A stretch of DNA of 64,000 nucleotides, from positions 1-64,000 of IMG/VR virus record IMGVR_UViG_3300046703_000335; one strand, given 5' to 3'. The stretch's first letter is position 1; every line of letters begins with the position of its first letter. The notes beneath the pieces are model-generated. The model had not been told where the DNA came from and searched no databases. It saw only the letters and a list, made by a program, of their open reading frames with translations. This document shows positions 43,884 through 63,922 of this stretch, piece by piece. The position numbers were made by a program, and so were the translations under genes.

Positions 43884-44999
43884 TTAATTTTCTTCAAGAA
43901 TTCTTTTTAATCGAGTAGAACACTCTACAGAATCCGGCAGGGTATTAAAGTTGGGACGAACTCTCCGGTGGATATTTTTCCATAGTTTAAGACTATTTCC
44001 CTTATGATAATACATAAGATCTGAGACAAGATCTGGATATCGCTCAGTTACCATAAAAAACAAAGTTTTATGGCTTATGTCCGCAGGAATATCTTTCATA
44101 ACTTCCTCATAAGTTTCCTTAACCCTAATATAGTCATTATGGTGGATATCGTATATCTGCCGATACAAGAGGTCTGTAAGCTCTCTAAACTCTTCGGGTA
44201 CCTCTGCTATGAAACTACGGGGGATATCCGCTTTATCGAAGTCCCAGGCACCCCAGAATGATAGTAGAGTCATATGTGATAGAATTCTATGAATTTTACA
44301 GTATTCTGATCCCTTAACCTTAATCTTAAGACCATTGTGGAAAGTAATAACAAAACCCTCCTCAGTCGCCGGTAGAGTCTTACAATAAGCATATAACTCA
44401 TCCAGGCTATTGAACTCTACAGCCTCTACCACAGTGGCTCCTATGCGCTTTCCTTCCTCTTTAAGGGAGGTGTAGGATATCTCTTCTCCGGTTTCATTAT
44501 TGATGACACCTAAAAGTATCAAATCCTCTGTATCACCATAGTCTATTACAATTTTATTTTCTGGATAGACCATCTCAAAAAGATATGTATGCCCTTTAAG
44601 CATTTCTGTTGACCTTATATGCTTCCGGAACCATATAGTAGCCCACTGCGCCTGATCTGATAAGAAAGATCCCTTGGTCGCTATATAATCTTGACCTTCA
44701 TATCTAAAGTAAATCGCTAAGCTACCGTCAATCTTCTTAAGGGAAATAAAAGGCTTCTTCGCCAAGTCACAAAGATCAATCTTACCCATAAGCTCGGAGG
44801 CATTAAAGAATTTCTTAAAGGAACGTGAAACCACCTCTCCAGTGATCCTATTAAATATGATACCCCGTGCAGCCATAGTGATATCATCCCAATGCCCGTC
44901 ATATTGACATTCCCGTGAATAGCAAAAAAGAACAAGATCATTCCACTCAGTATGTCTGACATAAGGATGGTCATAAAATTTCTTAATATCAAAAGTCAT
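43884..44999 (-). CDS. T4 Rnl1-family RNA ligase
   Basis: ARGIIF, SFKKFFN, KIDGSL motif I, LFE, EEGFV, KIKVKG.EY. Confidence 0.9.
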   Translation of the reverse strand: MTFDIKKFYDHPYVRHTEWNDLVLFCYSRECQYDGHWDDITMAARGIIFNRITGEVVSRSFKKFFNASELMGKIDLCDLAKKPFISLKKIDGSLAIYFRYEGQDYIATKGSFLSDQAQWATIWFRKHIRSTEMLKGHTYLFEMVYPENKIVIDYGDTEDLILLGVINNETGEEISYTSLKEEGKRIGATVVEAVEFNSLDELYAYCKTLPATEEGFVITFHNGLKIKVKGSEYCKIHRILSHMTLLSFWGAWDFDKADIPRSFIAEVPEEFRELTDLLYRQIYDIHHNDYIRVKETYEEVMKDIPADISHKTLFFMVTERYPDLVSDLMYYHKGNSLKLWKNIHRRVRPNFNTLPDSVECSTRLKRILEEN

Positions 45000-47537: not shown

Positions 47538-48197
47538 TTACGATATAAGAAAATCCCAACCTTTAACAAGCCATTCTACATAAAGATCATCTTGTTTACC
47601 ATACCAACCACAAGCATAGGGGGAATTAGCTTCTACCAAAGCCATTTCTCCAGAATCCAACAATCCGAAATCCACTGCTCCACAATAACCTTTAGGAATA
47701 TCTATATCTAATTCGGGAGCATCTGGAGTATTTAGCTCATCACCAGAATACCATTCTCCTGTTAGAATCTTTCCATCAGCGATATAGTATCTCCACTCAT
47801 TTATAAAGGTAACGATATCTGAACACCAATAGGGGCCTCGTTTTTTCTTTCTATAGCCCCCTACTGTAATAAAACCATTAAATCTTTTATGACGATCTGC
47901 TGGCTTAATAAATACGCCCCTATTTTGGGGCCATAAAGTCGATTTCCATACTTTTCTATAAAGGTGGTCTTTTAAAAAATCAGGATAATAATCTGGTATA
48001 GTCTTTTCACTGGGTAAGAACTTTTCGCACCAATCCACCCGACCAGAAGGAATATATCCTTCTGGTCTATCTCCCAGTCTATTACAAAGTTTATAGGGGA
48101 TCCTTTTTAAGATACAGTAGCTTATGATGGCTTTCTCTTCATTAGCACAGGAACCATAAACTAAATGTGATTGTAATGCAAATCCTTTAATATCCAT
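47538..48197 (-). CDS. ATP-grasp (R2K/DUF4343-like) protein
   Basis: VFIKPA..KRF.G, EWRYYI..G.I, AVDFG......ALVEAN..Y. Confidence 0.75.
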   Translation of the reverse strand: MDIKGFALQSHLVYGSCANEEKAIISYCILKRIPYKLCNRLGDRPEGYIPSGRVDWCEKFLPSEKTIPDYYPDFLKDHLYRKVWKSTLWPQNRGVFIKPADRHKRFNGFITVGGYRKKKRGPYWCSDIVTFINEWRYYIADGKILTGEWYSGDELNTPDAPELDIDIPKGYCGAVDFGLLDSGEMALVEANSPYACGWYGKQDDLYVEWLVKGWDFLIS

Positions 48198-48261
48198 TTT
48201 TCAAAAAATCCCTAATAATGTGGACTACCCGCTCACTCTATTTTTTAAGGGGAGCATGCCT

Positions 48262-48744
48262 TCATAGTTCGATTACCCATATATCTGGATACTTTAATAA
48301 GACACCGGTAATCTCTGGAAATTCATTTATCAAAAGAGGGATATCGATAAGTTTTCCAGTATATACCGAACGAATCAACATACCAAGTGTTCTAATCTTA
48401 TTTTTTACAACATCATCCCATTTACTTGAATAGTACTCATACTCTTTTTCTGAAAAAAGAGCATCAGATATATGAATCTTATAGATACTATCTATCATAG
48501 TCACTACTCTATTAATACCTGAAGATTGTTGACATTGATTAGTCATGAAAGATCTTGAAGTACTAATATTTAGTGATCTTATAGTGTCTATTCTGTCCAT
48601 AGTACTTAATGCAGAATAATCAAAAAATTTAAGCTCAGCATGCTTTTTCAGAATATTATATATTTTAAATTCTGTTAAATGAGGACTATTCTGCCCAAAT
48701 ACTAAGGCTACCGCATGGTAGTTAAACTCATCATTGTTATCCAT
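48262..48744 (-). CDS. Hypothetical protein
   Basis: ORF. Confidence 0.5.
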   Translation of the reverse strand: MDNNDEFNYHAVALVFGQNSPHLTEFKIYNILKKHAELKFFDYSALSTMDRIDTIRSLNISTSRSFMTNQCQQSSGINRVVTMIDSIYKIHISDALFSEKEYEYYSSKWDDVVKNKIRTLGMLIRSVYTGKLIDIPLLINEFPEITGVLLKYPDIWVIEL

Positions 48745-48751
48745 GCTATAC

Positions 48752-49003
48752 CTACTTTAATTCCAGGTACATTTTATTACACGTAGCACAATAAGAAGCA
48801 GGTACATTTCCACCTTTAAATCCCCAATTTCTTAAAAGATTTTCAATCTTCATTACTCTTTTTCCACCACAAAGAGCTTCACGGGAATATTCTCCTGAAA
48901 CAGATAGATAATAGTGCCACATACCACTCATACTATCCACAACTTTTAATAAATGTTTTTTTTGATTCTTCTGTTTCATCTTTTTTTCTTTCGTTTCATG
49001 CAT
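48752..49003 (-). CDS. Small Zn-binding hypothetical protein
   Basis: ALCG...CATC. Confidence 0.45.
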   Translation of the reverse strand: MHETKEKKMKQKNQKKHLLKVVDSMSGMWHYYLSVSGEYSREALCGGKRVMKIENLLRNWGFKGGNVPASYCATCNKMYLELK

Positions 49004-49263
49004 ATCCCAAAATTTTTTTGCTTTCTAACCCATTTAACCCATTTTTGGACACTCGGTTGAGATCTAAGCAGATTTATATTATAGTAGAGATCTCTCAGCT
49101 CATTATTAGTAAAAAGCATGTGAATTTGATCTCCACAATCGATGCAAACCAGCTCAGTATCCCTACCTCCCTTTGCTACCGGAGTAGTATGATGTTTTTC
49201 CTGATAACGTGTATCTGGGATCTCTCTACCGCACAGGGAACAGTATATTTCTTCTTTACGCAT
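48976..49263 (-). CDS. Small HNH endonuclease
   Basis: CSLC, HHTTP..KGG, C..C..QIH. Confidence 0.75.
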   Translation of the reverse strand: MRKEEIYCSLCGREIPDTRYQEKHHTTPVAKGGRDTELVCIDCGDQIHMLFTNNELRDLYYNINLLRSQPSVQKWVKWVRKQKNFGICMKRKKKR

Positions 49264-49266
49264 AAA

Positions 49267-49440
49267 TCATTTAGGGATATCTTCAACTTTTTTATACCAG
49301 AATTCAAACCCCGTGACTTGAAGACCATGCTCTCTAGCTATTTCGATCAGATCATCCTCTGTGGCATCATCTTCAACTTCCATTTCCTCTGTATCAGCTT
49401 CGCTCATACCATTACATCGAGCACCAACGATTATTTTCAA
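49267..49440 (-). CDS. Small acidic phage protein, 57 aa, TTG start
   Basis: SD AGGAG then TTG AAA ATA...; MKIIVGARCNGMSEADTEE...WYKKVEDIPK. Confidence 0.55.
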   Translation of the reverse strand: MKIIVGARCNGMSEADTEEMEVEDDATEDDLIEIAREHGLQVTGFEFWYKKVEDIPK

Positions 49441-49539
49441 GATTTTTTCTCCTAAAAAATATAAATGAGTACATCTATAATTAATATACTGTTATAAAAC
49501 ATGGGACAAAAGTGCTATCTATAAAATACTGAGGATTTA

Positions 49540-50172
49540 TTACGAGAGATTAAGAGTCTTCTTAATACCTATCTGATAGTTATCTATGATCCAATCAAAC
49601 TGACCTCGATAGATATTTAAGAATGCATCGATAGCAATGCGCGGGTGAGTGAATCGTAACTTTGGGTTATCTTTATTAAATTCTGCATGACTTATGTAGT
49701 GCCATGGATCTGTGGTCTCCATTTCATAATCATCAATAAGCATTATCCCACCAACTTTTAAAAGTTTCCAGGATAATATCAAATCCTCAAGGAGATTACA
49801 GGCATTATGATCCCCATCCACATAAATAAAATCAAATCTAAAGATATTATCCTTTATAAGATCGATAAGAACTTTTCCGGAAGGTTCCCTATAAAATATA
49901 ATGTCTCCTAAATGCTGTCTTAGGTTATATTCTCCATTTTTAGCGATATAAGGATCAATACAATGTAACATCCCCTTACTTCTGTGGATACTTTCAATAC
50001 TTAAGATATTATCAATCAACCAACAGGAAGTTCTTCCCTCAAAAACTCCTATTTCTAAGAAATTCAACTGAGATTCTTCTGTATTACTAAAAAGCTGTTT
50101 GATATACGCAAAATTAGTATGATGATCGGCATTCCAAAAATTTATTTTTTTTGTAAACTTATACTTATTCAT
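49540..50172 (-). CDS. Class I SAM-dependent methyltransferase
   Basis: FLEIGVFEG, FDFIYVDGDH, LKVGGIMLIDDY. Confidence 0.85.
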   Translation of the reverse strand: MNKYKFTKKINFWNADHHTNFAYIKQLFSNTEESQLNFLEIGVFEGRTSCWLIDNILSIESIHRSKGMLHCIDPYIAKNGEYNLRQHLGDIIFYREPSGKVLIDLIKDNIFRFDFIYVDGDHNACNLLEDLILSWKLLKVGGIMLIDDYEMETTDPWHYISHAEFNKDNPKLRFTHPRIAIDAFLNIYRGQFDWIIDNYQIGIKKTLNLS

Positions 50173-50647
50173 TTATTATAAATTCTCTCATTTTTGGTAA
50201 GTATTTAATTACAAAGGTATCTGTATAGTACCATTTATCTTGAAGACACCTAAGCATATAAATACTTACTTTAAATGTATAAAAATTATAAGTGTCAAGT
50301 ATCGAATCCAATAGAAACTGATGAGTCTGAGAAACTTTACAAATATCTAACTCAATTAGTCTATCTCGAGTCCAACTTATTAAGTGCTCAGATTTAAACT
50401 TATTTGCTAATGTCAGAAACATCGTCTTATCTTCAGCTAATAATTCGTATTCATCATCTTTATACATATTAGAATACATATAGAGATACCATCGATATGT
50501 CCCGGGAACCAGATCCGGAGGAATATACCCTGGAACGTTATCATCCAATGAGCAATTCAGGTGATCAACTGATAATGCTAATAATCTATTTAAATATTCT
50601 GGATTAATCATTTCCACAGCCCTTAGGCTTGTATATGCCTTTTTCAC
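50165..50647 (-). CDS. Hypothetical protein
   Basis: ORF. Confidence 0.5.
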   Translation of the reverse strand: MKKAYTSLRAVEMINPEYLNRLLALSVDHLNCSLDDNVPGYIPPDLVPGTYRWYLYMYSNMYKDDEYELLAEDKTMFLTLANKFKSEHLISWTRDRLIELDICKVSQTHQFLLDSILDTYNFYTFKVSIYMLRCLQDKWYYTDTFVIKYLPKMREFIINE

Positions 50648-51479
50648 GAACTATTTTGTCATAATAATATACTGCGGGGACTCCTACTACTTCTACTCCA
50701 GTTTTAGTACGCTTGACAGTAGAATTATGGTTAAATTCATTCCTGGCTATATTACCTATTATTTTCATATCCTCAAAGCATGCAAAGACATTCCCACCTA
50801 AAGTATGCCCCCCAATAAGTATGGTCTTATATCCTCGAGTGCATGTACAAAAATCATTACACTTTTTATATTCAAAGTCTACAAGATACCAATCTTCTCC
50901 ATCATAATCCTTGACTTCATGGAAATCCTTGCCACGATCATACCCTTTAAAATCCTGAATCTTAAAAGGTATACCAAATGCCTTCCATTTACGTTTATTT
51001 TCTTTTATTACTTCCTTATCATTATGCACCAGTAGCTCTTTAACATATACGGGGACGCCATTATCATGAAGGAAGTGTACGTTGTCTTCGTACATTTTTA
51101 CTAAACTTGGAATATGACCCATCATTTTTCGATGAAAAGTAAATCCTACACGGTGTATCCTATCTTTATAGGGTAATAACCGTGCATAATTTTCACGACT
51201 CTGAAGGCCATTTGTGAGAAAATCAAAGCGTTCTATTGAAGTCGATCGAATAACTGTGCAGATAGTATTAATATTTGTGGAGATGAAAGGCTCACCACCG
51301 TGAAAATGCATCAAAATATCTTCAGCGGGTAAAAGATGTGTGTCCCTGAATAGTTTATATTGGTCAATTGAGAAAGATTGATGCTTTGTGTAATTAGAAT
51401 AGAAACGTTCATGATGGAAGCAATAACTGCAACGGAGATTACAGTCAAAAAAAATTGGGTATGCAATAAATAGCTTCAA
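50604..51479 (-). CDS. Radical SAM protein
   Basis: CNLRCSYC, FHGGEP, TNG; C-terminal Cys cluster. Confidence 0.85.
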   Translation of the reverse strand: MKLFIAYPIFFDCNLRCSYCFHHERFYSNYTKHQSFSIDQYKLFRDTHLLPAEDILMHFHGGEPFISTNINTICTVIRSTSIERFDFLTNGLQSRENYARLLPYKDRIHRVGFTFHRKMMGHIPSLVKMYEDNVHFLHDNGVPVYVKELLVHNDKEVIKENKRKWKAFGIPFKIQDFKGYDRGKDFHEVKDYDGEDWYLVDFEYKKCNDFCTCTRGYKTILIGGHTLGGNVFACFEDMKIIGNIARNEFNHNSTVKRTKTGVEVVGVPAVYYYDKIVREKGIYKPKGCGND

Positions 51480-51520
51480 AGTATATTATCTTTTATTTAT
51501 ATTATATGTTAATTTACAAA

Positions 51521-51921
51521 TGGAGGAGAGGGGAGTTGAACCCCTGTGTCAAGTATGATCCCTATTAATCTCTACATGCTTAGTTTAATTTGCACTACCC
51601 CTCTGTAAATATCAATTAAACAAAATTTTTAACAGAGTGCATTAAGTAATTTCGGTCCCCTTCTCTATTATGCTTTTCGGGTACCCTACTTCGTGATCTT
51701 TTAAGAGATCGGATCCCACGATTGTCCGATACTCTTTGCTACCTTTAATTAGGCAGCGATTGAGCTTGCAACACCTAAACTGATATTATCAGCAAAGGCG
51801 AGAGCAAACTTAACAGCATAATCTTTTGCAATTATACTTTAACGGATGATTTACGAGGCCAACCGTTATCCTCAACATGCAATTAATACTTCACCTACCT
51901 GATCGAAACCAGTACTCCCCC
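51521..51921 (-). ncRNA. ssrA: tmRNA with tag (A)AKDYAVKFALAFADNISLGVASSIAA*
   Basis: 5' GGGGGAGUACUGGUUUCGAUC; 3' GGGUUCAACUCCC-CUCCUCCA; G3:U70 pair; AUAAUU-GCA resume context; tag ORF 51749..51829. Confidence 0.93.
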
Positions 51922-52390: not shown

Positions 52391-53029
52391 TTAATTAACT
52401 CTACATATTTTAAAGTCCTTCAAGCTTATAAGATAATTTTCTTTTACACCAGTATCAACAAATCTTATTAAAGATTCTGTACCGACAATTACAGCCAAAA
52501 GTGCAGTATTGCGTGCAAGGGGATACTCACAAACATCTATCCCTGTACCTTTTTTAGGTACACGATATCTCTCGTTCCAGGTAACTTCTGCGCAATCCTC
52601 TGATAAGCCTATGTGCATACAATCGATCTTATTAACTAAGCAATGATCCATAACTATTTTACGACTCTCCGGATTATCAAAGCCATCAATTACTATCGAA
52701 TCAGCTTTTAAAAATTTTCGAACATTGGAAGCCTCAAGTTTTTTATCGATAGGATCTATAGTAACTTTCATAACATTGAAGAGATGTGACCGGATAGCTG
52801 CAACTTTCAGTTGACCTACATCCCGACTATTCCAAATTTGAGTATTTCGGTTATGTTCCTCTACTCTATCAAAATCGATTACAGTCATTCTCTGAAAACC
52901 CTGACGTACCAGATTATCTGCGAGGTTCGAACCGATCGCACCTACCCCGCATAACGTGATATGCTGTGCAGCTATCTTCTTTAAAAGATCTTCCCCACGG
53001 TAAGCTCCCTCATGTACAAAAGTTTTCAT
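52391..53029 (-). CDS. ThiF/E1-like ubiquitin-like-protein activating enzyme (ORF extends to 53065; likely start 53029)
   Basis: CGVGAIG, IDFDRVEEHN..TQ, GQLK, IDGFDN, DVCEYPLARN. Confidence 0.9.
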   Translation of the reverse strand: MKTFVHEGAYRGEDLLKKIAAQHITLCGVGAIGSNLADNLVRQGFQRMTVIDFDRVEEHNRNTQIWNSRDVGQLKVAAIRSHLFNVMKVTIDPIDKKLEASNVRKFLKADSIVIDGFDNPESRKIVMDHCLVNKIDCMHIGLSEDCAEVTWNERYRVPKKGTGIDVCEYPLARNTALLAVIVGTESLIRFVDTGVKENYLISLKDFKICRVN

Positions 53030-53598
53030 TATCTCACCTTTTTTATATTTTCTATGACATTGCATGCAATTAAAAAATCACTAAGATAATCCAAGTTATA
53101 CCTTGAAACTGCATATGTGGTCCCATTATTGTCTTGTTTTAATAATACTACCCAATGACTGAATGTCAATTCCATCCCAGGCAGAGCAGAGATATAGGGT
53201 CCCGATATAACATCCTGTTCCCAATTTGAATTTTCTTTCAATATCTTAAGAGTATGATGAATGAGATTCAGCCATTTTCTTTCCTCAAGAAGATCTTCCA
53301 AAAAAACATGAGGGTATCCTTCCCAATCATCAATAGGCTCCAATTCATATACAAAAAAGTCAGTCTCATATCCTGTTCGGGGTATTCTAACAGTATTGCT
53401 TATAGCTCGATTACCAGACAGCATTTCATTGTAAATATTACGAATTTTAGGATGCCATTCCTTGTTTATATACAAAGGCAATTCCAATTTTTGTAAGTTA
53501 CTCAGAAAGTATAAATCTTCCACCATCTGGTAACTATTAATTCTCGTCAGATGTCTTGTTAAATTTTCAAAATCTATACTATGAGAATATGTAAACAT
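53029..53598 (-). CDS. Hypothetical protein
   Basis: TAATG-coupled to the ThiF gene. Confidence 0.55.
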   Translation of the reverse strand: MFTYSHSIDFENLTRHLTRINSYQMVEDLYFLSNLQKLELPLYINKEWHPKIRNIYNEMLSGNRAISNTVRIPRTGYETDFFVYELEPIDDWEGYPHVFLEDLLEERKWLNLIHHTLKILKENSNWEQDVISGPYISALPGMELTFSHWVVLLKQDNNGTTYAVSRYNLDYLSDFLIACNVIENIKKVR

Positions 53599-54225: not shown

Positions 54226-54314
54226 TTTTACTCCAATACAAAAAAGCTAATGAATGCAAATTTCTATAGTTCATTCTACTATTTAATATACTATTTTAAA
54301 ATTAGCTATACAAT

Positions 54315-54350
54315 AAAAAAGAAAGGGGAAGACTTTTCCCGGTCTTCCCC
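54315..54350 (-). terminator. Rho-independent terminator downstream of the tRNA-mimic RNAs
   Basis: 9-bp stem GGGGAAGAC/GTCTTCCCC plus U-tract. Confidence 0.85.
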
Positions 54351-54397
54351 CTCAAATTATATCTCACCCGAGAGTTGTAATCTCAGGATTAGATAGT

Positions 54398-54560
54398 GAT
54401 GGTCAATAAATAATACCCTCGCCCTTTATAATAAGTCTCCCACTCTACCGCTGAGCTATAGACCCCCGAAGTTATCTATTACAAAATAACTTAGAGGGTC
54501 TAAATGGATTTGAACCACTGACAGGAGTGTTTTAAGGCTACCTATTCTTTATTAACCACC
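54398..54560 (-). ncRNA. YrlA-like Y RNA 2 (circularly permuted tRNA mimic)
   Basis: Order T arm (AGTGG-TTCAAAT-CCATT), acceptor TAGACCC/GGGTCTA closed by a hairpin, D arm (GCTC-AGCGGTA-GAGT); 13-bp terminal stem GGTGGTTAATAAA/TTTATTGACCATC; no anticodon loop. Confidence 0.75.
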
Positions 54561-54624
54561 TTCAATTTTGAATCTTGGACATTCAAAACACTAATCATCA
54601 ACTTAAATCTGGTATGCAAAAAAA

Positions 54625-54755
54625 TAAAAATAATCTTTTGCCTTTTACAGAAGTACTCTACCAAACTGAGCTACCTTCTCCATATTTTTTAGGGGAGAAG
54701 GAGAGGAATCGAACCTCCGCGTCTTCTGATATAGAAAAAGACAAAAGTGCTTTTA
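54625..54755 (-). ncRNA. YrlA-like Y RNA 1 (circularly permuted tRNA mimic, His-like acceptor)
   Basis: T arm GGAGG-TTCGATT-CCTCT, acceptor CCTTCTC-C/G-GAGAAGG closed by a short linker, D arm GCTC-AGTTTGGTA-GAGT; ends pair (CTTCTG/CAGAAG, then CTTTTGTCTTTT/AAAAGGCAAAAG). Confidence 0.75.
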
Positions 54756-54776
54756 GGATAATTAACCTACTCGGGG

Positions 54777-55550
54777 CTAATTAACTTTAAACCCCTGATT
54801 AATATAATTAAAAAATTTCAGTCCAACTTTTGCTGACTCAGTTTCCTGAGCATTTGCTTTTGACCGGGCGATCTTCACACCAGAGATCAGGCAATCAATA
54901 CGATTGAGCAACTGACTCTTCTGTTTTGGAGATAAACCTCCACTAGCGTAGGTTTGTGTCCAAGTTCCAACTGCTTCATCCGACATAACAATCTCAGTTT
55001 GTGCTTGAAACTTATCAGTAGCTTCAGCCTTGGTAATAACCTTTGGAATTTTCTTTGTTCTGATACGTTCTATTGGTTCAGATTTCCATACCCCTGTTCG
55101 AGTTACATCATCTGACCAAACCTTTGAGGGATCAATTGTAGGAATCTCTTCATAGACCTTCCTAACTCTTTCCAGAGCGGATTCCATCTGTACCAGAAAT
55201 GTTACAGGGGCCTTTTCAAGAATAATCTCTGTAGTGCCATCAGGAAGCTCTACAACGACATCCGCAGAGGCACTCTGATTACCACGTTCTTTCTGAAGTT
55301 CAATATCAATAAAACGAACTATCGATGCTTGAGAATAATCAAGTTTATCCTTAACTGTTGTGACCATAGGAGTAAACTCTTCATCAGGGCGATCCTTATC
55401 CTGGTCATTGAAAGGAGAATAACTCTTACGTGATTCAATGAAGTGTGCCGAGCGCTGATTGAATGTTTTAAGAGTTTCATCAATAATCTTGGCAAAGACA
55501 TCCTTTGCATCTTTTTCTACTGCAAGAAGCTCATACAATTTACCACCCAT
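54777..55550 (-). CDS. Conserved helical hypothetical protein directly upstream of the Y RNAs
   Basis: SD GGAGG; KL.ELLAVEK N-terminus, coiled-coil ends. Confidence 0.7.
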   Translation of the reverse strand: MGGKLYELLAVEKDAKDVFAKIIDETLKTFNQRSAHFIESRKSYSPFNDQDKDRPDEEFTPMVTTVKDKLDYSQASIVRFIDIELQKERGNQSASADVVVELPDGTTEIILEKAPVTFLVQMESALERVRKVYEEIPTIDPSKVWSDDVTRTGVWKSEPIERIRTKKIPKVITKAEATDKFQAQTEIVMSDEAVGTWTQTYASGGLSPKQKSQLLNRIDCLISGVKIARSKANAQETESAKVGLKFFNYINQGFKVN

Positions 55551-55656
55551 TAAAAACCTCCTGAGAATATTATGTATATTTTATCTATCTAATAGGATAT
55601 CTAAAGGATATTATTAAATATAATTAAAACTCTAAGGTAATAACATATAAAAATAA

Positions 55657-55686
55657 AAAAGAGTCCTGCTTTGGCGGGACTCTTTT
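55657..55686. terminator. Bidirectional-type intrinsic terminator
   Basis: AAAAGAGTCCTGC-TTTG-GCGGGACTCTTTT. Confidence 0.8.
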
Positions 55687-55710
55687 GAAAAAGCATATAA
55701 ACATCAAATC

Positions 55711-56904
55711 TTATCTCTGAGCAGTATTATTCTTACCTGCCATTCCCATATTAATACCGAGATCCATAGCTGTCTTAGCATTCAGCATATTAATGAGATC
55801 AGTTGCTCCATTTGCACCTTTACTATTTTCACCCATAATAACAGAAGGAACCCAGTTACCTTTATATTCAGAGATAGCTTTAGCATAATTAGCGTTAACT
55901 TCTTTATAAGCCTCTAATTTTTTATCCAAAGCACCATCAGCTGTCATAACAAGTTTCTTACGTTCAGCCTCTCCCTGCCCCAGAAGAATCTGTTCTGCTT
56001 TCTTAAATTCAGCAGCCTCTTTGTTAAGTTTAGCAACCTCTTTTTCTTGCTCCCCAAGAGTGACTGCGCGCGCCTTGACAACTTCCTGTTCCCAGCGACT
56101 TCTTGCAGCATTAGCCTCCCCCTGCTTTGCAACAGTAATTGCATTCTGTTCTGCTTTTTTAGCATCGGCTATTGAAGTTTGAACATCCATAGTAATCTGC
56201 TGTTGACTCTGAATTTGCTTTTCAATTGCCCCATCATAAGGGAGGGCATTAATCGCGAAGTTAAATGTTTTTATGCCAAAAATAGCCATAGCAGCATCTT
56301 CTTGACGTTCAGGCACTCCATTTTTCATTATTATATCAACTACAGTTACGGTTTTTTCAGCGCCAGTCATTTGGTCTATAGTCTTTGCTTCCTTAGAAAC
56401 AGTTCGGTACACACCATTTTGAATCTGATCCTCTACATACTGAATAAGATAGTTTCTTTTTTCGGCATATGACTCTTTGGAAGACATAAGTGGTCCAGTC
56501 ATATAAATGGCTTTATTTACTACTGTTGCTACTAACTGATTTTCAAGAGCTTGGATGCTACCAAATTTTGAATGAATATTAGAAAGATTAATGGGATCCA
56601 CAGGTAATTCATAACTTACACTGCCGTCCATTGTTCCATGTCCACCATCATTAAATCTTACTTGAGTTTTAAAGGAGTATATTTCTCTTTTAGGGTACTT
56701 AGATACCTTACCAAAACCTTGCCATTTTACACCGGCAGTTACATGCCAGGTAAGCTTACCAGAAATCGGACTTTGAACTACTAAGATCTGATTAGCATTA
56801 TTGACCTCAACAAATTGAAAAATTGACCACAAGCCTATTATGCATATGATCCCCCCAACGATTAATTTAAAAACTCCAGCAGGACTTTCCTGGGCTCTTG
56901 CCAT
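55711..56904 (-). CDS. SPFH/Band-7 (prohibitin-like) membrane protein
   Basis: N-terminal TM, SPFH core, Ala/Glu-rich coiled-coil. Confidence 0.85.
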   Translation of the reverse strand: MARAQESPAGVFKLIVGGIICIIGLWSIFQFVEVNNANQILVVQSPISGKLTWHVTAGVKWQGFGKVSKYPKREIYSFKTQVRFNDGGHGTMDGSVSYELPVDPINLSNIHSKFGSIQALENQLVATVVNKAIYMTGPLMSSKESYAEKRNYLIQYVEDQIQNGVYRTVSKEAKTIDQMTGAEKTVTVVDIIMKNGVPERQEDAAMAIFGIKTFNFAINALPYDGAIEKQIQSQQQITMDVQTSIADAKKAEQNAITVAKQGEANAARSRWEQEVVKARAVTLGEQEKEVAKLNKEAAEFKKAEQILLGQGEAERKKLVMTADGALDKKLEAYKEVNANYAKAISEYKGNWVPSVIMGENSKGANGATDLINMLNAKTAMDLGINMGMAGKNNTAQR

Positions 56905-57751: not shown

Positions 57752-58000
57752 TCATTGTAAAAAATCAGAAATCTGTGCTTCACAAGATGATTGAAATTCT
57801 TTAATAACAGCTATTGCATCTTTAACACGCTGAGCATCTTCTGGATTTGAGCATATAAGATCAGGATTAAGATATCCACCATCAGCTAAATCATACCAGA
57901 AATCACTGGATGATGCCCCACATTTTTTATTTACTTTCATAAGAAACCTTATATGAATTAAATTGGTAGCCAACAAATAAAAAATGGACCATAAGACCAA
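57752..58000 (-). CDS. Hypothetical protein
   Basis: SSDFWYDL.DGGY.NP; start uncertain. Confidence 0.55.
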   Translation of the reverse strand: MVLWSIFYLLATNLIHIRFLMKVNKKCGASSSDFWYDLADGGYLNPDLICSNPEDAQRVKDAIAVIKEFQSSCEAQISDFLQ

Positions 58001-58371
58001 AAGTCTACAGAAGATTTTTTTACAATAGTGGATCTATCTTTACGAAGACCTCCTACAGAATAGCAATAATACGCAGAATGATTCCCGCACCCAATCCCAC
58101 AGAGATATGTCTTATATATTGATTTCACCCAAGATCTCATTGTAGAATTATCTGTGGCACTTGGTGTGACATTTGATATACCTGGATGAGTATGATACCA
58201 CCCAATTACCCAAGGACTATTCGCTTTTGAATAATTCATTTCCACTTTAGCAGAAGATCCTATAGCATGATATCTACGAATCCCAATGAAAAATCTTATA
58301 CCTGGAAGAAACTTTTCCAAGCGAATTCCATACAAGAACCAGCATTCTTCTTTAAAGTTTAGTTTCGACAT
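57958..58371 (-). CDS. JAB/MPN (JAMM) metallopeptidase
   Basis: EECWFLYG (catalytic Glu), IGWYHTHP...PSATD JAMM motif. Confidence 0.85.
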   Translation of the reverse strand: MSKLNFKEECWFLYGIRLEKFLPGIRFFIGIRRYHAIGSSAKVEMNYSKANSPWVIGWYHTHPGISNVTPSATDNSTMRSWVKSIYKTYLCGIGCGNHSAYYCYSVGGLRKDRSTIVKKSSVDFWSYGPFFICWLPI

Positions 58372-60035: not shown

Positions 60036-60893
60036 TTATTGAACATTATTAAATCGATGCAACACACCCGTCTGTTGAGCTTCCCTAACCACAGTGATTA
60101 AGCTCTTCAAGTCAAACCTGTGATCATTTCCAGATAAACAAATACCTGCGGCAATGACCATTCGCTTGTTATCTTTCGAAATATGGCTGGTGAACTCCTC
60201 ACCATCCACCTTATATGTCACACTAAAGTGGTCACTTCTTTCTACGAACCGAACAAACTCTCCCCCGGCATGTTCCACATCTTTTTTTAAGACATTTTCT
60301 TTCTTATCCTCCAAAAACCTTTTATCAAAGGTCGTTCGAAGAGAATAAGCCATTTTTTCCTCAAATGAGAGATTTGCAAACTTAATCTCACCAGGGTCCA
60401 CTAACTTTTCCAAACTATCCCGAAGATATTCCGCTTTAGTAGGGTCATTCCCTGTATCTACACTCTCAAACCAGAAATTAGCACCGTCATAACGAACGAT
60501 AACACGGTCAAAATTCATGACCGTATCATCAAATAATAGCACCGGTATCAGCCCACGGAATGGCAACCCATATTTATTAGCCTTATCCGGGATAGCTAGG
60601 AATTCTTTGTCTCTTCTCAGAGTCAGAGTCACTCTTAGCCTACCAAGACGGCGTAAATAGAGCTCACGTTCAGTAAAGTCTGCATCACCGGTTATTTTAG
60701 CAGAAATAGAATTTAAAGGGCGGATTTTATACCACCCAGGATCAACATTAGGAACTTTGAATGTATATACCAGCCCATCGATAGTAGTTACTACAGAGTT
60801 ATTATAGAAAATAGGAGAAATGAACTCCAGATTTGTGATCTGTTGTTCTTTCCTTCCTAAATTACTAATAATATCAAGGACATTAATAGACAT
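60036..60893 (-). CDS. Conserved hypothetical protein adjacent to the TROVE gene
   Basis: GGAG SD; C-terminal AAGICLSG.D..FDL.SL..V.RE. Confidence 0.7.
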   Translation of the reverse strand: MSINVLDIISNLGRKEQQITNLEFISPIFYNNSVVTTIDGLVYTFKVPNVDPGWYKIRPLNSISAKITGDADFTERELYLRRLGRLRVTLTLRRDKEFLAIPDKANKYGLPFRGLIPVLLFDDTVMNFDRVIVRYDGANFWFESVDTGNDPTKAEYLRDSLEKLVDPGEIKFANLSFEEKMAYSLRTTFDKRFLEDKKENVLKKDVEHAGGEFVRFVERSDHFSVTYKVDGEEFTSHISKDNKRMVIAAGICLSGNDHRFDLKSLITVVREAQQTGVLHRFNNVQ

Positions 60894-60908
60894 ACAATCT
60901 CCCGAGTA

Positions 60909-62471
60909 TTACCTAAAAGATCCACGAGAAATCAAAGGCGTTTCCATGATCTCGAAAACCAGGTCAAGCTTAGATTTACGAGATAAAAGAGGGATCAATC
61001 CCGGTAATGCATAATAATCATTACCTTCAGGGGTATAGATATCATATTCAATACCCGCCCTCTTCAAGTTACTAGAAAAGGTATTATCCGCAGGTCCTAT
61101 ATGAATGATCACCACATTTGGACGAACATTAAATGTCTTTGCATACTGTTCGTACACTGTAGTAAACATAGGACTAGCATTTTCACCCTCATCCGTTATC
61201 ACCACAATAGTTTCCACACTCTTTTTCTTTAACAACAAATAATTAAGTGCACAACCCATCGAAGTTGACCCTCCGGCACGTATGGGTCTAAATGCATTCT
61301 CCCAGTCGGTCAAAGAAGTTCCTTTTGCCTCAATCACTGCTGGAGTTGTATCAAATGCTACCACAGTAAGTTCTGCTATTGTAGCACCAGAAATCAATGC
61401 TGCGGTATTCTTACCAACTTCAATTGCTTTATCCATTGATCCGGACCGGTCAACAAATACAGCGGTTGATACTGAAATCTGACCACTCTTTTTGACCTGA
61501 GCATCTGCTACTTTATCCAATTGTGCTAAAACATCTACATCAAGGATACGACCAGTTTTAGCAGCTGTTTTGGACTTAAGTGTCGACACATTCTTTGACT
61601 TTTCAGCCTTTTTCAATTTTTCCTGAATAAGTGCTTTTGTAGCTTCATTAGCCATAGCACCCTTCTCTTCAAGAGAAGCCATGTTATTAATGACTTCCAT
61701 AGAAGACATGCTATTGATAAGAGCCACGAGTATAGTTGGAGTAATTTTATCGATCAACCCAATTGCGATCGTATATGGAATTTTATTTTCCACAATCATC
61801 TTTGCTGCATCAGCCGGTTCTGCTTCTGATATCTTTTTCAAGATAGTCAGCTTAGAGTCTTCTGGTATTTTCCCATCAAAAAGAATAGCTTGAGCTTGTG
61901 CTGAAGGTTTTACTTTAATTTTCTTGTAAAGGCTCTTCAAATCAGCTCGATTCTTCAAAGCGACTGTATCAAATCGATCCTTATCCGCTTCCAACCAACG
62001 CAAATAATTTTTGATTTCAGTTTCAAAAGAGGAAGTGGTATTTCTTTTCATACCTACAGTCTTCTCTTCGATCCGAACTTCATCGATTGACTTCTTATCG
62101 ATCTTGATCTTTTTACCTGTCTTTATCCGAATCTTAACCTTTTTACCTCGGATAAAACCAAGTATTTTATTCTTCATGAAAACCGCATGTTTTCTGAAAA
62201 GAGCAAGACCGACTTCACGATTATCGATAAAGGGATCCGTAATAAGCATGGCTGCAAAGATCTCGTTATGATCCCTGATCTCGCCCTTAGCGAGATACCA
62301 GCAAGCAAGATGCGCATAGAACAACGGATCATTATCCCGAATATCCTCATGGATCTTTTTTAAAACGTCCGTATCACGATGAGGACAAGTCATGAATGAA
62401 TTGAGCACCCTAACACGGATATCCCCTTCAACTACAGGAGCTGCAGGGGGAATAACTCTACGAGTTGTCAT
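60909..62471 (-). CDS. Ro60-like TROVE-vWA domain protein
   Basis: PHRD..., DPLFYAHLA.WY...G.IRDH helical region, IPYTIAIG, ELNNM-like EVINNM, vWA MIDAS VDRSGSM...GST...ITDEGEN. Confidence 0.8.
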   Translation of the reverse strand: MTTRRVIPPAAPVVEGDIRVRVLNSFMTCPHRDTDVLKKIHEDIRDNDPLFYAHLACWYLAKGEIRDHNEIFAAMLITDPFIDNREVGLALFRKHAVFMKNKILGFIRGKKVKIRIKTGKKIKIDKKSIDEVRIEEKTVGMKRNTTSSFETEIKNYLRWLEADKDRFDTVALKNRADLKSLYKKIKVKPSAQAQAILFDGKIPEDSKLTILKKISEAEPADAAKMIVENKIPYTIAIGLIDKITPTILVALINSMSSMEVINNMASLEEKGAMANEATKALIQEKLKKAEKSKNVSTLKSKTAAKTGRILDVDVLAQLDKVADAQVKKSGQISVSTAVFVDRSGSMDKAIEVGKNTAALISGATIAELTVVAFDTTPAVIEAKGTSLTDWENAFRPIRAGGSTSMGCALNYLLLKKKSVETIVVITDEGENASPMFTTVYEQYAKTFNVRPNVVIIHIGPADNTFSSNLKRAGIEYDIYTPEGNDYYALPGLIPLLSRKSKLDLVFEIMETPLISRGSFR

Positions 62472-62529
62472 ATCTTATCTCCAATCTTATATAGTATCTT
62501 ATCTGTTATGGCACTCTATATAAAGTACC

Positions 62530-62790
62530 TTAGCTTTTACCAAACGGAGTATTAGCCCTTACTGTTATGTTCCCGTTTGAGCTAATTTCTATAGCATGGT
62601 CCCTGAATTCATCCATGCCTACATCATATTTCTGGGCTAATGCCATACGAATTTGATCATGATTAACAGATGATGGTGTTATCACTGTTCCGATAGTGAT
62701 ACCCAATGCTTCAAATCGATCTTGTGAAAAAAGATCGCTAAACTTAAGATCATCCTGTCTTCCTCGAAACATTACATGGATATCCTGCAT
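62530..62790 (-). CDS. Ubiquitin-like/beta-grasp small protein ending ...RANTPFG-KS
   Basis: GGAGG SD before ATG 62790; IHV.F.GR..D N-terminus and G.I.VR...FG C-terminus; E1 and JAB in the same region. Confidence 0.6.
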   Translation of the reverse strand: MQDIHVMFRGRQDDLKFSDLFSQDRFEALGITIGTVITPSSVNHDQIRMALAQKYDVGMDEFRDHAIEISSNGNITVRANTPFGKS

Positions 62791-62845
62791 ACACACCTCC
62801 TATAGATGTTGTTAATATAATGTTGTGTCAAAATTTTTTAAACTT

Positions 62846-63374: not shown

Positions 63375-63432
63375 ATCCGTGCTATCCTAAAATATTTAAA
63401 AAATTACGCAGAAGTTAGGGATGCTAATTTTT

Positions 63433-63508
63433 TGGCTTCTAATGATGGACTTGAACCATCGACGCATTTCTTATAAGGAAATTGCCCTACCAACTGGGCT
63501 AATTAGAA
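63433..63508 (-). tRNA. tRNA-Ile(UAU), CCA encoded
   Basis: TTCTAAT/ATTAGAA acceptor, GCCC D stem, ATTTC-CT TAT AA-GAAAT, GATGG-TTCAAGT-CCATC, G73-CCA. Confidence 0.88.
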
Positions 63509-63551
63509 AATGTAAGCAACCAAAGTAATTGCGTAATTTTTATTATTGTTT

Positions 63552-63576
63552 GTTTCAATCCGCGCTTTTCAGCGAC
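63552..63576 (-). CRISPR. Solitary minimised type I-C-like repeat unit 1
   Basis: GTCGCTGAAAAGCGCGGATTGAAAC. Confidence 0.55.
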
Positions 63577-63733
63577 TATATAAAAATGAGCTAATATAAG
63601 AATCTCTACCTAAGTCGTTCGTACTATATGATGACCAGATACCCATACTGGGCAGTGATCATCAAGTTTTTTTTACCCAAAAAAAATGTAAGTCCAAACT
63701 ATAATGGTAAAAATTCTATTAATTCGTTTGTTC

Positions 63734-63758
63734 GTTTCAATCCACGCTTTTCAGCGAC
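63734..63758 (-). CRISPR. Solitary minimised type I-C-like repeat unit 2
   Basis: GTCGCTGAAAAGCGTGGATTGAAAC. Confidence 0.55.
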
Positions 63759-63798
63759 TGTACAAAAGTAAAAAAGTTGAAACTACAGAAGTCGTGCA

Positions 63799-63873
63799 TG
63801 CTAGTCTGAGGGATTTGAACCCCCTACCTATTGATTAGAAGTCAATTGCTCTACCAAATGAGCTAATGTAAGC
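63799..63873 (-). pseudogene. Pseudo-tRNA-Arg(UCU) with disrupted acceptor stem
   Basis: Intact D, anticodon (ATTGA-CT TCT AA-TCAAT) and T arms; 5' GCTTACAT pairs only 4/8 with AGACTAGC. Confidence 0.7.
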
Positions 63874-63889
63874 CTTCACTGTAATTGTA

Positions 63890-63922
63890 GTTTCAACCAA
63901 GTACCCTATTCATCAGGGTTAC
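63890..63922 (-). CRISPR. Solitary CRISPR-repeat-like unit 3 (different type)
   Basis: GTAACCCTGATGAATAGGGTACTTGGTTGAAAC: 5-bp hairpin ACCCT/AGGGT plus TTGAAAC end. Confidence 0.4.

What the first reader, a model, noticed from the sequence alone, without database searches (positions are those of the whole stretch)
60036..62790. Candidate new system: Ro60-Y RNA ribonucleoprotein coupled to ubiquitin-like tagging
Seen: Ubl, TROVE-vWA (intact DxSxS MIDAS) and a 285-aa protein are three consecutive genes. The same 12-kb region carries the E1, JAB, two YrlA-like RNAs and tmRNA, while an RNA ligase and Thg1 lie further along. Established: Ro60/Y RNPs handle damaged RNA (RYPER with PNPase; rsr-yrlBA-rtcBA in Salmonella). 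Inference: a phage RNA-quality-control or anti-tRNase complex whose assembly or targets are controlled by Ubl conjugation. I know of no characterised link between these parts.
Basis: partly seen in the sequence, partly recalled or inferred. Interest (0 to 1): 0.9.

Follow-up and report, generated by a model that had tools for sequence, protein, structure and literature searches.

The report
Ro60-Y RNA operon with ubiquitin-like tag
A huge-phage genome carries a ring-shaped Ro60-like RNA-binding protein and its tRNA-like partner RNAs in one conserved gene set with a small ubiquitin-like protein, its activating enzyme and its trimming protease. The same set occurs in hundreds of bacterial species, and no paper I could search describes it.

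Summary
On the minus strand lie an 86-aa Ubl candidate (62530-62790), a 520-aa protein (60909-62471) and a 285-aa protein (60036-60893). A JAB peptidase, two YrlA-like RNAs, a ThiF-type E1 and a tmRNA lie within 11 kb; Rnl1 and Thg1 lie further on.

The 520-aa protein has no Pfam TROVE match. Its AlphaFold model (pLDDT 84.7) matches only Ro60 structures over its full length (Foldseek E 1e-10 to 3e-8), and its MIDAS residues are invariant.

The coupling is real:
- In 21 of 21 related loci with adequate flanks (Ro60-like at least 50% identical), Ubl, Ro60-like, p285, JAB and E1 co-occur in one order. In 12 loci they form a 3.7-4.5 kb operon.
- Natural in-frame Ubl-Ro60 fusions exist.
- Ubl tails after the terminal Gly occur only where a JAB is present (20/31 versus 0/28).
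- Permuted-tRNA Y RNAs lie next to the Ubl gene on the same strand.

The module is not phage-specific. At least 472 relatives lie in bacterial genomes, mostly filamentous cyanobacteria.

The Ubl fold, the E2 role of p285 and the conjugation target remain untested. I rate it a new variant of known kinds, with high interest.

The parts
62530..62790 (-). Ubl candidate (86 aa). It has a conserved C-terminal motif NGNITVRxNxxFG followed here by a 2-residue tail, KS.
   Evidence: the family alignment shows an invariant terminal Gly followed by 0-5 variable residues; it lies immediately upstream of the Ro60-like gene in most loci; it is fused in frame to Ro60-like in P0265 and P0292. No Pfam or PDB sequence hit; the fold was not predicted.
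60909..62471 (-). Ro60-like protein (520 aa): alpha-helical ring plus a C-terminal vWA domain with a complete MIDAS (D341, S343, S345, T403, D427). A basic beta-hairpin is inserted at aa 110-139.
   Evidence: AF2 pLDDT 84.7, pTM 0.79; the top 13 PDB matches are all Ro60 (9kop, 2nvo, 1yvp, 9nen and others), E 1.5e-10 to 3e-8, TM 0.51-0.64 over the full length; 17 of 40 relatives hit Pfam vWA_Ro60 (best 4.8e-9); the profile's best PDB sequence hit is phage phiLo Ro60, E 0.12, colinear.
60036..60893 (-). p285, a new protein family. It has an N-terminal helix, two beta-barrel (S1/OB-like) domains, a long helix, a 4-strand meander, and an invariant Cys252 in the motif AGICLSG..D..FDLKSLI. It is a candidate thioester carrier or adaptor.
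   Evidence: alignment, invariant C252; AF2 pLDDT 85.0; only weak S1/OB-type fold matches, no E2; co-occurs with the Ro60-like gene, and E1 starts right after it in 30 of 36 bacterial loci.
57958..58371 (-). JAB/JAMM metallopeptidase (137 aa) with a complete E...HxH...S..D motif.
   Evidence: Present in 21 of 21 phage-clade loci with full flanks. Ubl tails occur only where JAB is present.
52391..53065 (-). Minimal ThiF-type E1 adenylating enzyme (224 aa): GxGxxG, D64, R67, N72, Q76, K87, DxFDN, R135, and an invariant Cys179.
   Evidence: Pfam ThiF 1.1e-27; alignment; CBASS Cap2 E1-E2 models, 1e-17; NCBIfam ThiF 1.8e-28, below cutoff.
54629..54741 (-). YrlA-like RNA 1: closing stem, T-arm, capped acceptor-like stem and D-arm (a circularly permuted tRNA-like domain).
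   Evidence: Rfam YrlA 29.5 bits, full model, E 2.4e-4; the fold reproduces the YrlA architecture.
54424..54547 (-). YrlA-like RNA 2, with the same architecture and a longer capped acceptor stem.
54322..54353 (-). Intrinsic terminator that closes the pair of YrlA-like RNA genes.
   Evidence: 12-bp stem followed by a T-run.

Best explanation
This is one genetic module: a Ro60-like ring protein with tRNA-like Y RNAs, permanently coupled to a minimal ubiquitin-like activation system.

Shown:
- The ring protein has the Ro60 fold, with a strictly conserved MIDAS site.
- Permuted-tRNA (YrlA-type) RNA genes lie in the module on the same strand, most often directly after the Ubl gene.
- Ubl, Ro60-like, p285, E1 and (in phages and some bacteria) JAB are co-inherited in one order, often as an overlapping operon.
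- In some lineages the Ubl is translated as an N-terminal fusion to the Ro60-like protein, joined exactly at its terminal Gly.
- Residues after that Gly occur only where a JAB is encoded.

Inferred mechanism:
1. JAB cuts after the conserved aromatic-Gly end. It removes the 1-5 residue tail (KS in this phage) or frees the Ubl from the fusion.
2. The small ThiF-type E1 adenylates the Gly carboxylate and may hold it on Cys179.
3. The Ubl passes, probably through the invariant Cys252 of p285, to an amine on a target.
4. The target is either the Ro60-like RNP itself or a protein that the RNP and the S1/OB-like barrels of p285 bring close.
5. The Ro60 MIDAS site may dock the Ubl through its conserved acidic residue (D16).

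The outcome would be controlled assembly or targeting of an RNA-surveillance particle. In this phage it would act during infection, alongside tRNAs, tmRNA, RNA ligase and Thg1. The target and the physiological trigger are unknown.
For: - Fold. Ro60-type vWA in relatives. Invariant MIDAS. An intein interrupts one homologue next to the MIDAS motif.
- Synteny: one search shows that, of 26 window genes tested, only these five recur in the loci with <60% Ro60-like identity, and in the same order; 21/21 full-flank loci of the >=50% clade have all four partners, and 12 compact operons span 3.7-4.5 kb. GenBank huge phage LR756511.1 has all five.
- Bacteria. Of 46 full-flank loci, 39 have Ubl and 25 have Ubl+p285+E1. 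E1 directly follows p285 in 30/36.
- Fusions: (P0265 in two independent samples; P0292).
- Processing logic: with Fisher p = 3e-8.
- Catalytic motifs: JAB; E1; p285 Cys.
- RNAs: 24 strict hits, all on the gene strand, 0.0 in shuffles; 35 on the plus strand, 0 on the minus strand, nearly all just after Ubl; Rfam YrlA E down to 8.8e-8 on those sites.
- Precedent that phage Ro60 binds two adjacent Yrl RNAs, and the statement that the MIDAS role is unknown: PMC12135203.
- Precedent for MIDAS binding a UBL: PDB 8ql1 appears among the vWA fold matches.
Against: - The beta-grasp fold of the Ubl was never tested.
- p285 gives no E2/UBC match by sequence or fold, so the thioester relay is a guess from one invariant Cys and strand topology.
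- The E1 is closest to ThiF sulfur-carrier adenylyltransferases.
- Cyanobacterial versions lack a detectable JAB, and in 19 of 46 full-flank loci p285 and E1 are not within 8 kb.
- The JAB/tail statistic counts related sequences, so events are fewer than loci.
- No experiment shows RNA binding, conjugation or a target.
Confidence: 0.6

Rival explanations
1. Sulfur-carrier reading. The 86-aa protein is a ThiS/MoaD-type carrier that the ThiF-like E1 adenylates and that becomes a thiocarboxylate. p285, with its RNA-binding barrels and one essential Cys, then delivers sulfur to the tRNA-like Y RNAs or to tRNAs held by the Ro60-like ring. No protein is tagged.
For: The best named matches of the E1 are ThiF-type adenylyltransferases of about 200 aa. 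The E1 is minimal, with no UFD or E2-binding extension. JAB enzymes also trim sulfur carriers (CysO/Mec+ and QbsE/QbsD; from my own knowledge). The partner RNAs are tRNA-like, and the loci are full of tRNA genes. p285 has weak S1/OB-like fold matches and a lone invariant Cys.
Against: The C-terminus is aromatic-Gly (FG/YG/WG), not the Gly-Gly of known sulfur carriers. No rhodanese, cysteine desulfurase or PP-loop ATPase is among the conserved module genes. Translation as a Ubl-Ro60 fusion resembles ubiquitin-fusion precursors.
Confidence: 0.17
2. One reading: a phage-made counter-defence complex against anticodon nucleases, invented by phages and working together with the phage tmRNA, RNA ligase and Thg1.
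For: The window also encodes Rnl1, Thg1, tmRNA and tRNAs. Jumbo phages are known to carry TROVE proteins within RNA-repair gene sets (PMC7824862). tRNA genes and arrays accompany the module in bacteria too.
Against: tmRNA, Rnl1 and Thg1 are not syntenic with the module in other loci. The module is widespread on bacterial chromosomes, so it is not phage-specific. No nuclease or ligase is a conserved member.
Confidence: 0.12
3. Mere conserved gene order: the Ro60-like RNP and the Ubl/E1/JAB genes are independent functions that happen to be neighbours in one lineage.
For: In this window about ten unrelated ORFs separate p285, JAB and E1. In 19 of 46 bacterial loci p285 and E1 are not nearby.
Against: The order is kept from 36% to 100% Ro60-like identity, in phages and in several bacterial phyla, while all other neighbours change. 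Reading frames overlap in the compact operons. In-frame Ubl-Ro60 fusions exist.
Confidence: 0.05

Closest known systems
Ro60/Rsr-Y RNA ribonucleoproteins: D. radiodurans Rsr and RYPER, the Salmonella rsr-yrlBA-rtcBA operon, and Thermus phage phiLo Ro60 with Yrl1/Yrl2
   Same: Same overall fold: a helical ring capped by a vWA domain with a MIDAS. Some relatives match Pfam vWA_Ro60. The adjacent small RNAs have the YrlA architecture, a permuted tRNA-like domain. There are two RNA genes per phage locus, as in phiLo (PMC12135203).
   Different: Only 11-14% identity to solved Ro60s and no Pfam TROVE match. A basic beta-hairpin is inserted at aa 110-139. The gene is linked to Ubl, p285, E1 and JAB genes, a link none of the papers read here reports for described Ro60 loci; I did not examine those loci. 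In some lineages it is made as a Ubl fusion.
Bacterial ubiquitin-like conjugation operons: Bil (BilA-D), CBASS Cap2/Cap3, and the Ubl-E1-E2-JAB sets of Iyer, Burroughs and Aravind
   Same: A small protein ending in an exposed or trimmed Gly, a ThiF-type E1 with a conserved Cys, and a JAMM peptidase with a full motif. The E1 matches Cap2 E1-E2 models, and the JAB weakly matches Cap3 and desampylase models.
   Different: No recognisable UBC-fold E2. p285 is a new family. The E1 is a stand-alone protein of 212-224 aa. The terminus is aromatic-Gly. A Ro60-like RNP and Y RNAs are core members. The module occurs in phages as well as bacteria.
ThiS-ThiF, MoaD-MoeB and CysO-Mec+ sulfur-carrier systems
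   Same: A small ThiF-like adenylating enzyme gives the best named match, and a JAB trims the carrier.
   Different: No Gly-Gly end, and no sulfur donor or biosynthetic enzyme in the module.
vWA/MIDAS partners of ubiquitin-like domains: Rea1/MDN1 MIDAS with the UBL domains of Rsa4/NLE1 and Ytm1, proteasomal Rpn10, and vWA-MoxR 'FtsH ternary' systems with Ubl conjugation (PMC7159879)
   Same: A MIDAS-bearing vWA domain is paired genetically or physically with a Ubl. 8ql1 and 2x5n appear among the vWA fold matches. A bacterial operon precedent is quoted.
   Different: Here the vWA domain is the cap of a Ro60 ring. There is no MoxR ATPase, RING or caspase-like effector. Docking of the Ubl on the MIDAS is my hypothesis and is untested.

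Membership tests
Ro60 / TROVE proteins | Helical (HEAT-like) ring closed by a C-terminal vWA domain | tested here: met
   AF2 model with pLDDT 84.7. The top 13 Foldseek PDB hits are all Ro60, E 1.5e-10 to 3e-8, TM 0.51-0.64 over about 540 columns.
Ro60 / TROVE proteins | Sequence match to the Pfam TROVE domain (PF05731) | tested here: not met
   No TROVE hit for the window protein at E<=0.01, nor for any of 40 diverse relatives at E<=1. NCBIfam Rsr matches only E 0.011 on one relative.
Ro60 / TROVE proteins | Ro60-type vWA domain with a complete MIDAS (DxSxS...T...D) | tested here: met
   D341, S343, S345, T403 and D427 are invariant. 17 of 40 relatives match PF25045 vWA_Ro60, best 4.8e-9. The window protein itself gives only a sub-threshold VWA_2 hit.
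Ro60 / TROVE proteins | A cognate Y RNA encoded next to the gene | tested here: met
   Two modules in the window. Strict scanner: 24 hits in the phage and metagenome loci and 35 in the bacterial loci, all on the gene strand, against 0.0 in shuffles.
Ro60 / TROVE proteins | Binds Y RNA and misfolded RNA ends | not testable with these tools
   Needs EMSA or RIP-seq.
YrlA RNA (Rfam RF02553) | Score at or above the Rfam gathering threshold (69 bits) | tested here: not met
   Window RNA 1 scores 29.5 bits. The best relative scores 48.4 bits, E 8.8e-8. All are full-length matches but lie below 69.
YrlA RNA (Rfam RF02553) | Closing stem plus T-arm, capped acceptor-like stem and D-arm | tested here: met
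   The MFE folds reproduce it. The scanner requires all three helices and finds none in shuffles.
Ubiquitin-like conjugation systems | Modifier with a beta-grasp fold | not tested
There are no Pfam or PDB sequence hits. The call rests on size, context and the C-terminus only.
Ubiquitin-like conjugation systems | Conserved C-terminal Gly, free or exposed by processing | tested here: met
   The terminal Gly is invariant with 0-5 residue tails. Tails occur in 20 of 31 JAB-positive and 0 of 28 JAB-negative loci. Fusion junctions lie exactly at the Gly.
Ubiquitin-like conjugation systems | E1 adenylation domain with nucleotide- and Mg-binding residues and a conserved Cys | tested here: met
   Pfam ThiF 1.1e-27. 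GxGxxG, D64, R67, K87, DxFDN, R135 and C179 are invariant.
Ubiquitin-like conjugation systems | E2 of the UBC fold with a catalytic Cys | tested here: inconclusive
   p285 has an invariant Cys252 after a 4-strand meander. No E2 appears in the listed top 50 of either Foldseek search (PDB, BFVD), and no Pfam, PADLOC, NCBIfam or PDB-profile search gives an E2 match.
Ubiquitin-like conjugation systems | JAMM/JAB isopeptidase motif E...HxH...S..D | tested here: met
   E8, H60, H62, S71 and D74 are invariant. Pfam Prok-JAB and JAB hits are weak.
Ubiquitin-like conjugation systems | Covalent conjugates on target amines | not testable with these tools
   Needs mass spectrometry.
ThiS/MoaD sulfur carriers | Gly-Gly C-terminus and an associated sulfur donor or biosynthetic enzyme | tested here: not met
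   Termini are FG, YG or WG. The conserved neighbours are Ro60-like, p285 and JAB only.

The most novel reading that the evidence does not exclude
The Ro60 vWA/MIDAS domain, whose role has been unknown since the first Ro60 structure, is a receptor or acceptor for a dedicated ubiquitin-like protein. If so, Ro60-Y RNA particles in this large bacterial and phage family are assembled, aimed or switched by Ubl conjugation, carried out by a new type of Cys carrier (p285) in place of a UBC-fold E2. In cyanobacteria the same system also recruits spare or decoy parts of the translation machinery: tRNAs, a bL12-like protein and a stand-alone mimic of the 23S GTPase-associated centre.
Probability: 0.3. 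Interest if true: 0.9.

Novelty: new variant of a known kind. Interest (0 to 1): 0.8.

Why it matters
Ro60 and Y RNAs are conserved from bacteria to humans and are a major autoantigen. The job of the Ro60 MIDAS site is still stated to be unclear (PMC12135203), and bacterial Ro60 biology is known from only a few species.

Here a distant Ro60-like family, found in hundreds of bacterial species and in huge phages, is tied to a ubiquitin-like activation set by operon structure, by gene fusion and by a processing signature. That makes the MIDAS question directly testable with five small genes and one or two RNAs.

It would add a new branch to the fast-growing field of bacterial and phage ubiquitin-like systems (Bil, CBASS Cap2/Cap3). 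This branch has an RNA particle as partner and may use a non-UBC carrier. It also flags a family of Ro60-like proteins that domain searches miss.

Tried and rejected
- Megablast of the region against GenBank phages found nothing. tblastn found only the unannotated huge phage LR756511.1.
- Pfam, PHROGs, PADLOC and NCBIfam gave nothing for the Ubl or p285, and only sub-threshold vWA hits for the ring protein.
- A sequence profile against the PDB put phiLo Ro60 first, but only at E 0.12. The fold search was needed.
- I tested the idea that p285 is an E2 and could not support it. Foldseek against PDB and BFVD gave only weak S1/OB-type matches. A C-terminal profile hit only repetitive adhesin strands, which I reject as spurious.
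- I asked whether p103, just upstream of the Ubl, is a bL12 homologue like the cyanobacterial gene. It is not.
- I tested whether the cyanobacterial families f148, f241 or f107 replace the missing JAB. The JAB profile gave no signal.
- A relaxed RNA scanner gave too many chance hits (7.3 per shuffled set), so I rely on the strict one.
- The MAFFT alignment of three Yrl RNAs was too poor to build a covariance model. I used the Rfam YrlA model on relatives instead.
- Burroughs and Aravind 2016 (NAR 44:8525) could not be read. What I say about it is from memory.
- The GTPase-centre RNA mimic seen in cyanobacterial loci is absent from the window.
Full report
**1. What is in the window**

All genes of the region run on the minus strand. 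The three ORFs of the finding are:
- An 86-aa protein at 62530-62790. The listed ORF starts at a GTG at 62796. Homologues begin at the ATG that gives MQDIHVMF.
- A 520-aa protein at 60909-62471.
- A 285-aa protein at 60036-60893, here called p285.

Downstream on the same strand lie:
- A JAB peptidase at 57958-58371.
- An SPFH protein and a DUF7873 protein.
- Two tRNA-like RNAs in the 54226-54776 gap, closed by an intrinsic terminator.
- A ThiF-type E1 at 52391-53065.
- A tmRNA at 51518-51921.

An Rnl1-type RNA ligase (43884-44999) and a Thg1 (37760-38557) lie further along. The window comes from a 210-kb viral contig, IMGVR_UViG_3300046703_000335.

**2. Is the 520-aa protein a Ro60?**

By sequence alone it is not recognisable:
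- Pfam gives only a sub-threshold VWA_2 hit and no TROVE hit.
- PHROGs, PADLOC and NCBIfam give nothing.
- A family profile against PDB sequences puts the Thermus phage phiLo 'TROVE domain-containing protein' first, colinear, but only at E 0.12.

By structure it is clear:
- An AlphaFold2 model built from 35 family members, without templates, has pLDDT 84.7 and pTM 0.79.
- Its 13 best PDB matches are all Ro60: phage phiLo, D. radiodurans Rsr, Xenopus and human. They score E 1.5e-10 to 3e-8 and TM 0.51-0.64 over about 540 aligned columns.
- The next matches are isolated vWA domains at E 5e-5 and worse.

Two further points agree with this:
- Among 40 diverse relatives, 17 match Pfam vWA_Ro60, best 4.8e-9.
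- D341, S343, S345, T403 and D427 are among the very few invariant columns of a family alignment at 31% mean identity.

The model also shows a lysine-rich beta-hairpin at aa 110-139. I did not check whether solved Ro60 structures have one. I therefore call the protein Ro60-like: same fold and same domain logic, but it fails the sequence definition of TROVE.

**3. The RNAs**

The first RNA (54629-54741) matches the whole Rfam YrlA model at 29.5 bits (E 0.0067 in a 16-kb scan, 2.4e-4 locally). The gathering score is 69.

Both RNAs fold as a closing stem, a T-arm, an acceptor-like stem capped by a loop, and a D-arm. This is the circularly permuted tRNA-like domain that defines YrlA (PMC4201824).

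A strict scanner for that architecture gave these results:
- 24 hits in 21 of the first 97 loci (phage and metagenome loci, including the window's own contig, L003), all on the strand of the Ro60-like gene, against 0.0 in shuffles.
- 35 plus-strand and 0 minus-strand hits in 80 bacterial loci. Nearly all lie 100-500 nt after the Ubl gene, even where the Ubl lies 5 kb from the Ro60-like gene.
- The Rfam YrlA model independently hits those sites with E down to 8.8e-8.

In this window and its closest relatives (L001, L018) the RNA pair has moved to a position between JAB and E1, next to DUF7873.

**4. Is the coupling to the Ubl system real?**

I profiled 26 window proteins against related loci. 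In the loci with less than 60% Ro60-like identity, only five recur, always in the same order and on the same strand: Ubl, Ro60-like, p285, JAB and E1.

With profile HMMs over 88 non-redundant phage and metagenome loci:
- All 21 loci that have adequate flanks and at least 50% Ro60-like identity carry all four partners.
- In 12 loci the five genes form a 3.7-4.5 kb operon with overlapping ends.
- In the window the same five genes are spread over 10.4 kb by insertions.
- The one GenBank relative, the 595-kb uncultured phage LR756511.1, has all five.

Two further lines of evidence go beyond synteny:
- Some lineages encode the Ubl fused in frame to the N-terminus of the Ro60-like protein. The junction lies exactly after the terminal Gly (...RPEASWG|AVTTEVDQRL...TPHRD). 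This is seen in P0265, on contigs from two samples, and in P0292.
- The Ubl ends in a conserved aromatic-Gly followed by 0-5 variable residues. Such tails occur in 20 of 31 distinct Ubls from loci with a JAB and in 0 of 28 from loci without one, where every Ubl stops at ...RPEAVYG. Fisher p is 3e-8, with the caveat that the sequences are related.

Both fit a JAB that exposes the Gly.

The enzymes look active:
- JAB keeps E, HxH, S and D.
- The E1 keeps GxGxxG, the Arg/Asn/Gln/Lys nucleotide contacts, DxFDN and an invariant Cys179.

**5. What remains uncertain**

- The Ubl fold was not tested.
- p285 is a new family of 147 clusters. It has an invariant Cys252 in AGICLSG..D..FDLKSLI.
- Its model (pLDDT 85.0) shows two small beta-barrels, a long helix, a four-strand meander, the Cys loop and a helix. 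That order recalls a minimal E2.
- However, Foldseek finds only weak S1/OB-like matches and no E2, and no library names the family. The E2 role is therefore inference.
- The E1's best named relatives are ThiF sulfur-carrier adenylyltransferases. This keeps a sulfur-transfer rival alive, although the termini are not Gly-Gly and no sulfur enzymes are conserved nearby.

**6. The module is not phage-specific**

A scan of one genome per species found at least 472 relatives at 41-45% identity. Most are in filamentous cyanobacteria, including complete chromosomes of Nostoc, Calothrix and Aliinostoc. Others are in Anaerolineae, KSB1, Planctomycetota, Acidobacteriota and Desulfococcaceae.

Of 46 full-flank bacterial loci:
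- 39 have the Ubl.
- 27 have p285 and 26 have E1.
- 25 have all three.
- E1 starts right after p285 in 30 of 36 cases.

A JAB is detected only in the non-cyanobacterial versions.

Cyanobacterial loci add genes of their own between the Ubl and the Ro60-like gene:
- A bL12 (L7/L12)-like paralogue that is not preceded by rplJ.
- Two unnamed families.
- tRNA genes alternating with the Yrl RNAs.
- In nine loci, an 85-nt stand-alone mimic of the 23S GTPase-associated centre.

Huge phages carry a compact, JAB-containing version of a widespread cellular module.

**7. Comparison with what is known**

- Phage Ro60 with two adjacent Yrl RNAs is characterised for phiLo. It forms RYPER-like complexes with host PNPase. 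That paper states that the MIDAS role is unclear (PMC12135203).
- TROVE proteins in jumbo-phage RNA-repair sets are noted in PMC7824862.
- vWA proteins combined with Ubl conjugation occur in the FtsH ternary systems (PMC7159879).
- A preprint on putative Asgard viruses lists a Ro60 and ThiF/E1 homologues in one virus without connecting them.
- Three full-text searches found no paper that links Ro60 or Y RNA to a Ubl system.
- I could not read Burroughs and Aravind 2016. From memory, it treats Rot/TROVE and SPFH as RNA-repair scaffolds with cognate RNAs, not with Ubl systems.

**8. Verdict**

The mechanism, target and biological role are still inferred.

It is a new, widespread variant that combines two known kinds of system and adds one new protein family. 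It gives a concrete way to test what the Ro60 MIDAS site does.

Noticed in passing
window 63552-63576 and 63735-63759 (minus strand); also L001 9053, L008 8836-8865 and 8920-8949, L018 1260, L027 about 565-592 and 696-727: A conserved hairpin repeat: GTCGC, a variable stem-loop with compensatory changes, then GCG-TGGATTGAAAC. From memory it looks like a type I-C CRISPR repeat. It occurs as one or two copies 84-182 nt apart, not as an array, among the small-RNA genes upstream of the Ubl gene. It could be solitary repeat units acting as an RNA anti-CRISPR, or a borrowed processing site. Rfam gave no CRISPR-DR hit.
   Followed up: partly
window 63776-63897 (minus strand), core 63807-63866: A tRNA-like element matches Rfam tRNA model positions 7-64 (51.3 bits), with anticodon loop CUUCUAA. 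It has no acceptor stem and ARAGORN does not call it. Instead it is enclosed by a perfect 12-bp long-range stem, GTTGAAACTACA/TGTAGTTTCAAC. The neighbouring tRNA-Ile(UAU), 63433-63508, is likewise flanked by AAATTACGCA/TGCGTAATTT.
   Followed up: partly
window 63400-63900; Yrl flanks in L008, L016, L023, L026, L027, L032, L035, L036, L039, L040: Small RNA genes of this phage clade, both tRNAs and Yrl RNAs, share flanking motifs: CTTACAT (or CATACAT) just upstream and GCACGACT (or GTACGACT) downstream. This suggests a common promoter or processing signal.
   Followed up: no
window 54777-56904 (minus strand): An SPFH/Band-7 protein (397 aa) and a DUF7873 protein (257 aa, Pfam 2.8e-68) lie directly upstream of the two YrlA-like RNAs. 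From memory, Burroughs and Aravind 2016 linked SPFH modules to a tRNA-like RNA. In L002 and L007 the SPFH gene lies between the Ubl and the Ro60-like gene. In most loci no SPFH gene is present.
   Followed up: partly
P0264 (901 aa, homologue of the 520-aa protein): This homologue carries an intein with a LAGLIDADG endonuclease, starting about 15 residues after the aligned position of the MIDAS DxSxS motif (protein aa 338; window-protein aa about 345). That region is among the most conserved parts of the protein.
   Followed up: partly
L109 6741-7130, and 29 further bacterial loci (L076, L079, L081, L087 among the metagenome loci): A ribosomal protein bL12 (L7/L12)-like paralogue (PDB 1dd3, E 1.5e-19) lies between the Ubl/Yrl genes and the Ro60-like gene in cyanobacterial versions, with no rplJ before it. 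A tandem-GNAT acetyltransferase (PDB 7q3a, 3.9e-30) often lies upstream. Both are absent from the phage clade.
   Followed up: partly
L152 10688-10772; pattern also in L076, L109, L111, L121, L165, L170, L176, L178: An isolated RNA of about 85 nt, closed by its own stem, matches the GTPase-associated centre of 23S rRNA (Rfam LSU_rRNA_archaea positions 1162-1247, E 5e-12). There are 11 copies in 9 cyanobacterial-type loci, all on the module strand, and none in the window.
   Followed up: partly
L111 2623-5226 and 7280-7694; L164 6573-7675; L152 2127-2548: Genuine tRNA genes alternate with the YrlA-like RNAs between the Ubl and the Ro60-like gene. In L111 an array of more than 20 tRNA genes precedes the module.
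   Followed up: no
L014 13236-13859: A TnpB/IS605-type gene fragment (Cas12f1-like TNB domain, 2.5e-19) lies about 1.8 kb downstream of the Ro60-like gene. L014 is one of the full-flank loci that lack Ubl, p285, JAB and E1, so the module may have been disrupted there.
   Followed up: no
window 47538-51479 (minus strand): A radical SAM protein (50604-51479), a 160-aa protein and a class I methyltransferase (49540-50172) follow the E1 and tmRNA. They are syntenic with the E1 in L001, L002 and L006 only. An R2K-type ATP-grasp protein (47538-48197) lies beside them.
   Followed up: no
window 60909-62471, aa 110-139: The model shows a long, lysine-rich beta-hairpin (GKKVKIRIKTGKKIKIDKK...) projecting from the helical ring. 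It is variable in length across the family. It could be an extra RNA-binding arm or a cluster of acceptor lysines.
   Followed up: no
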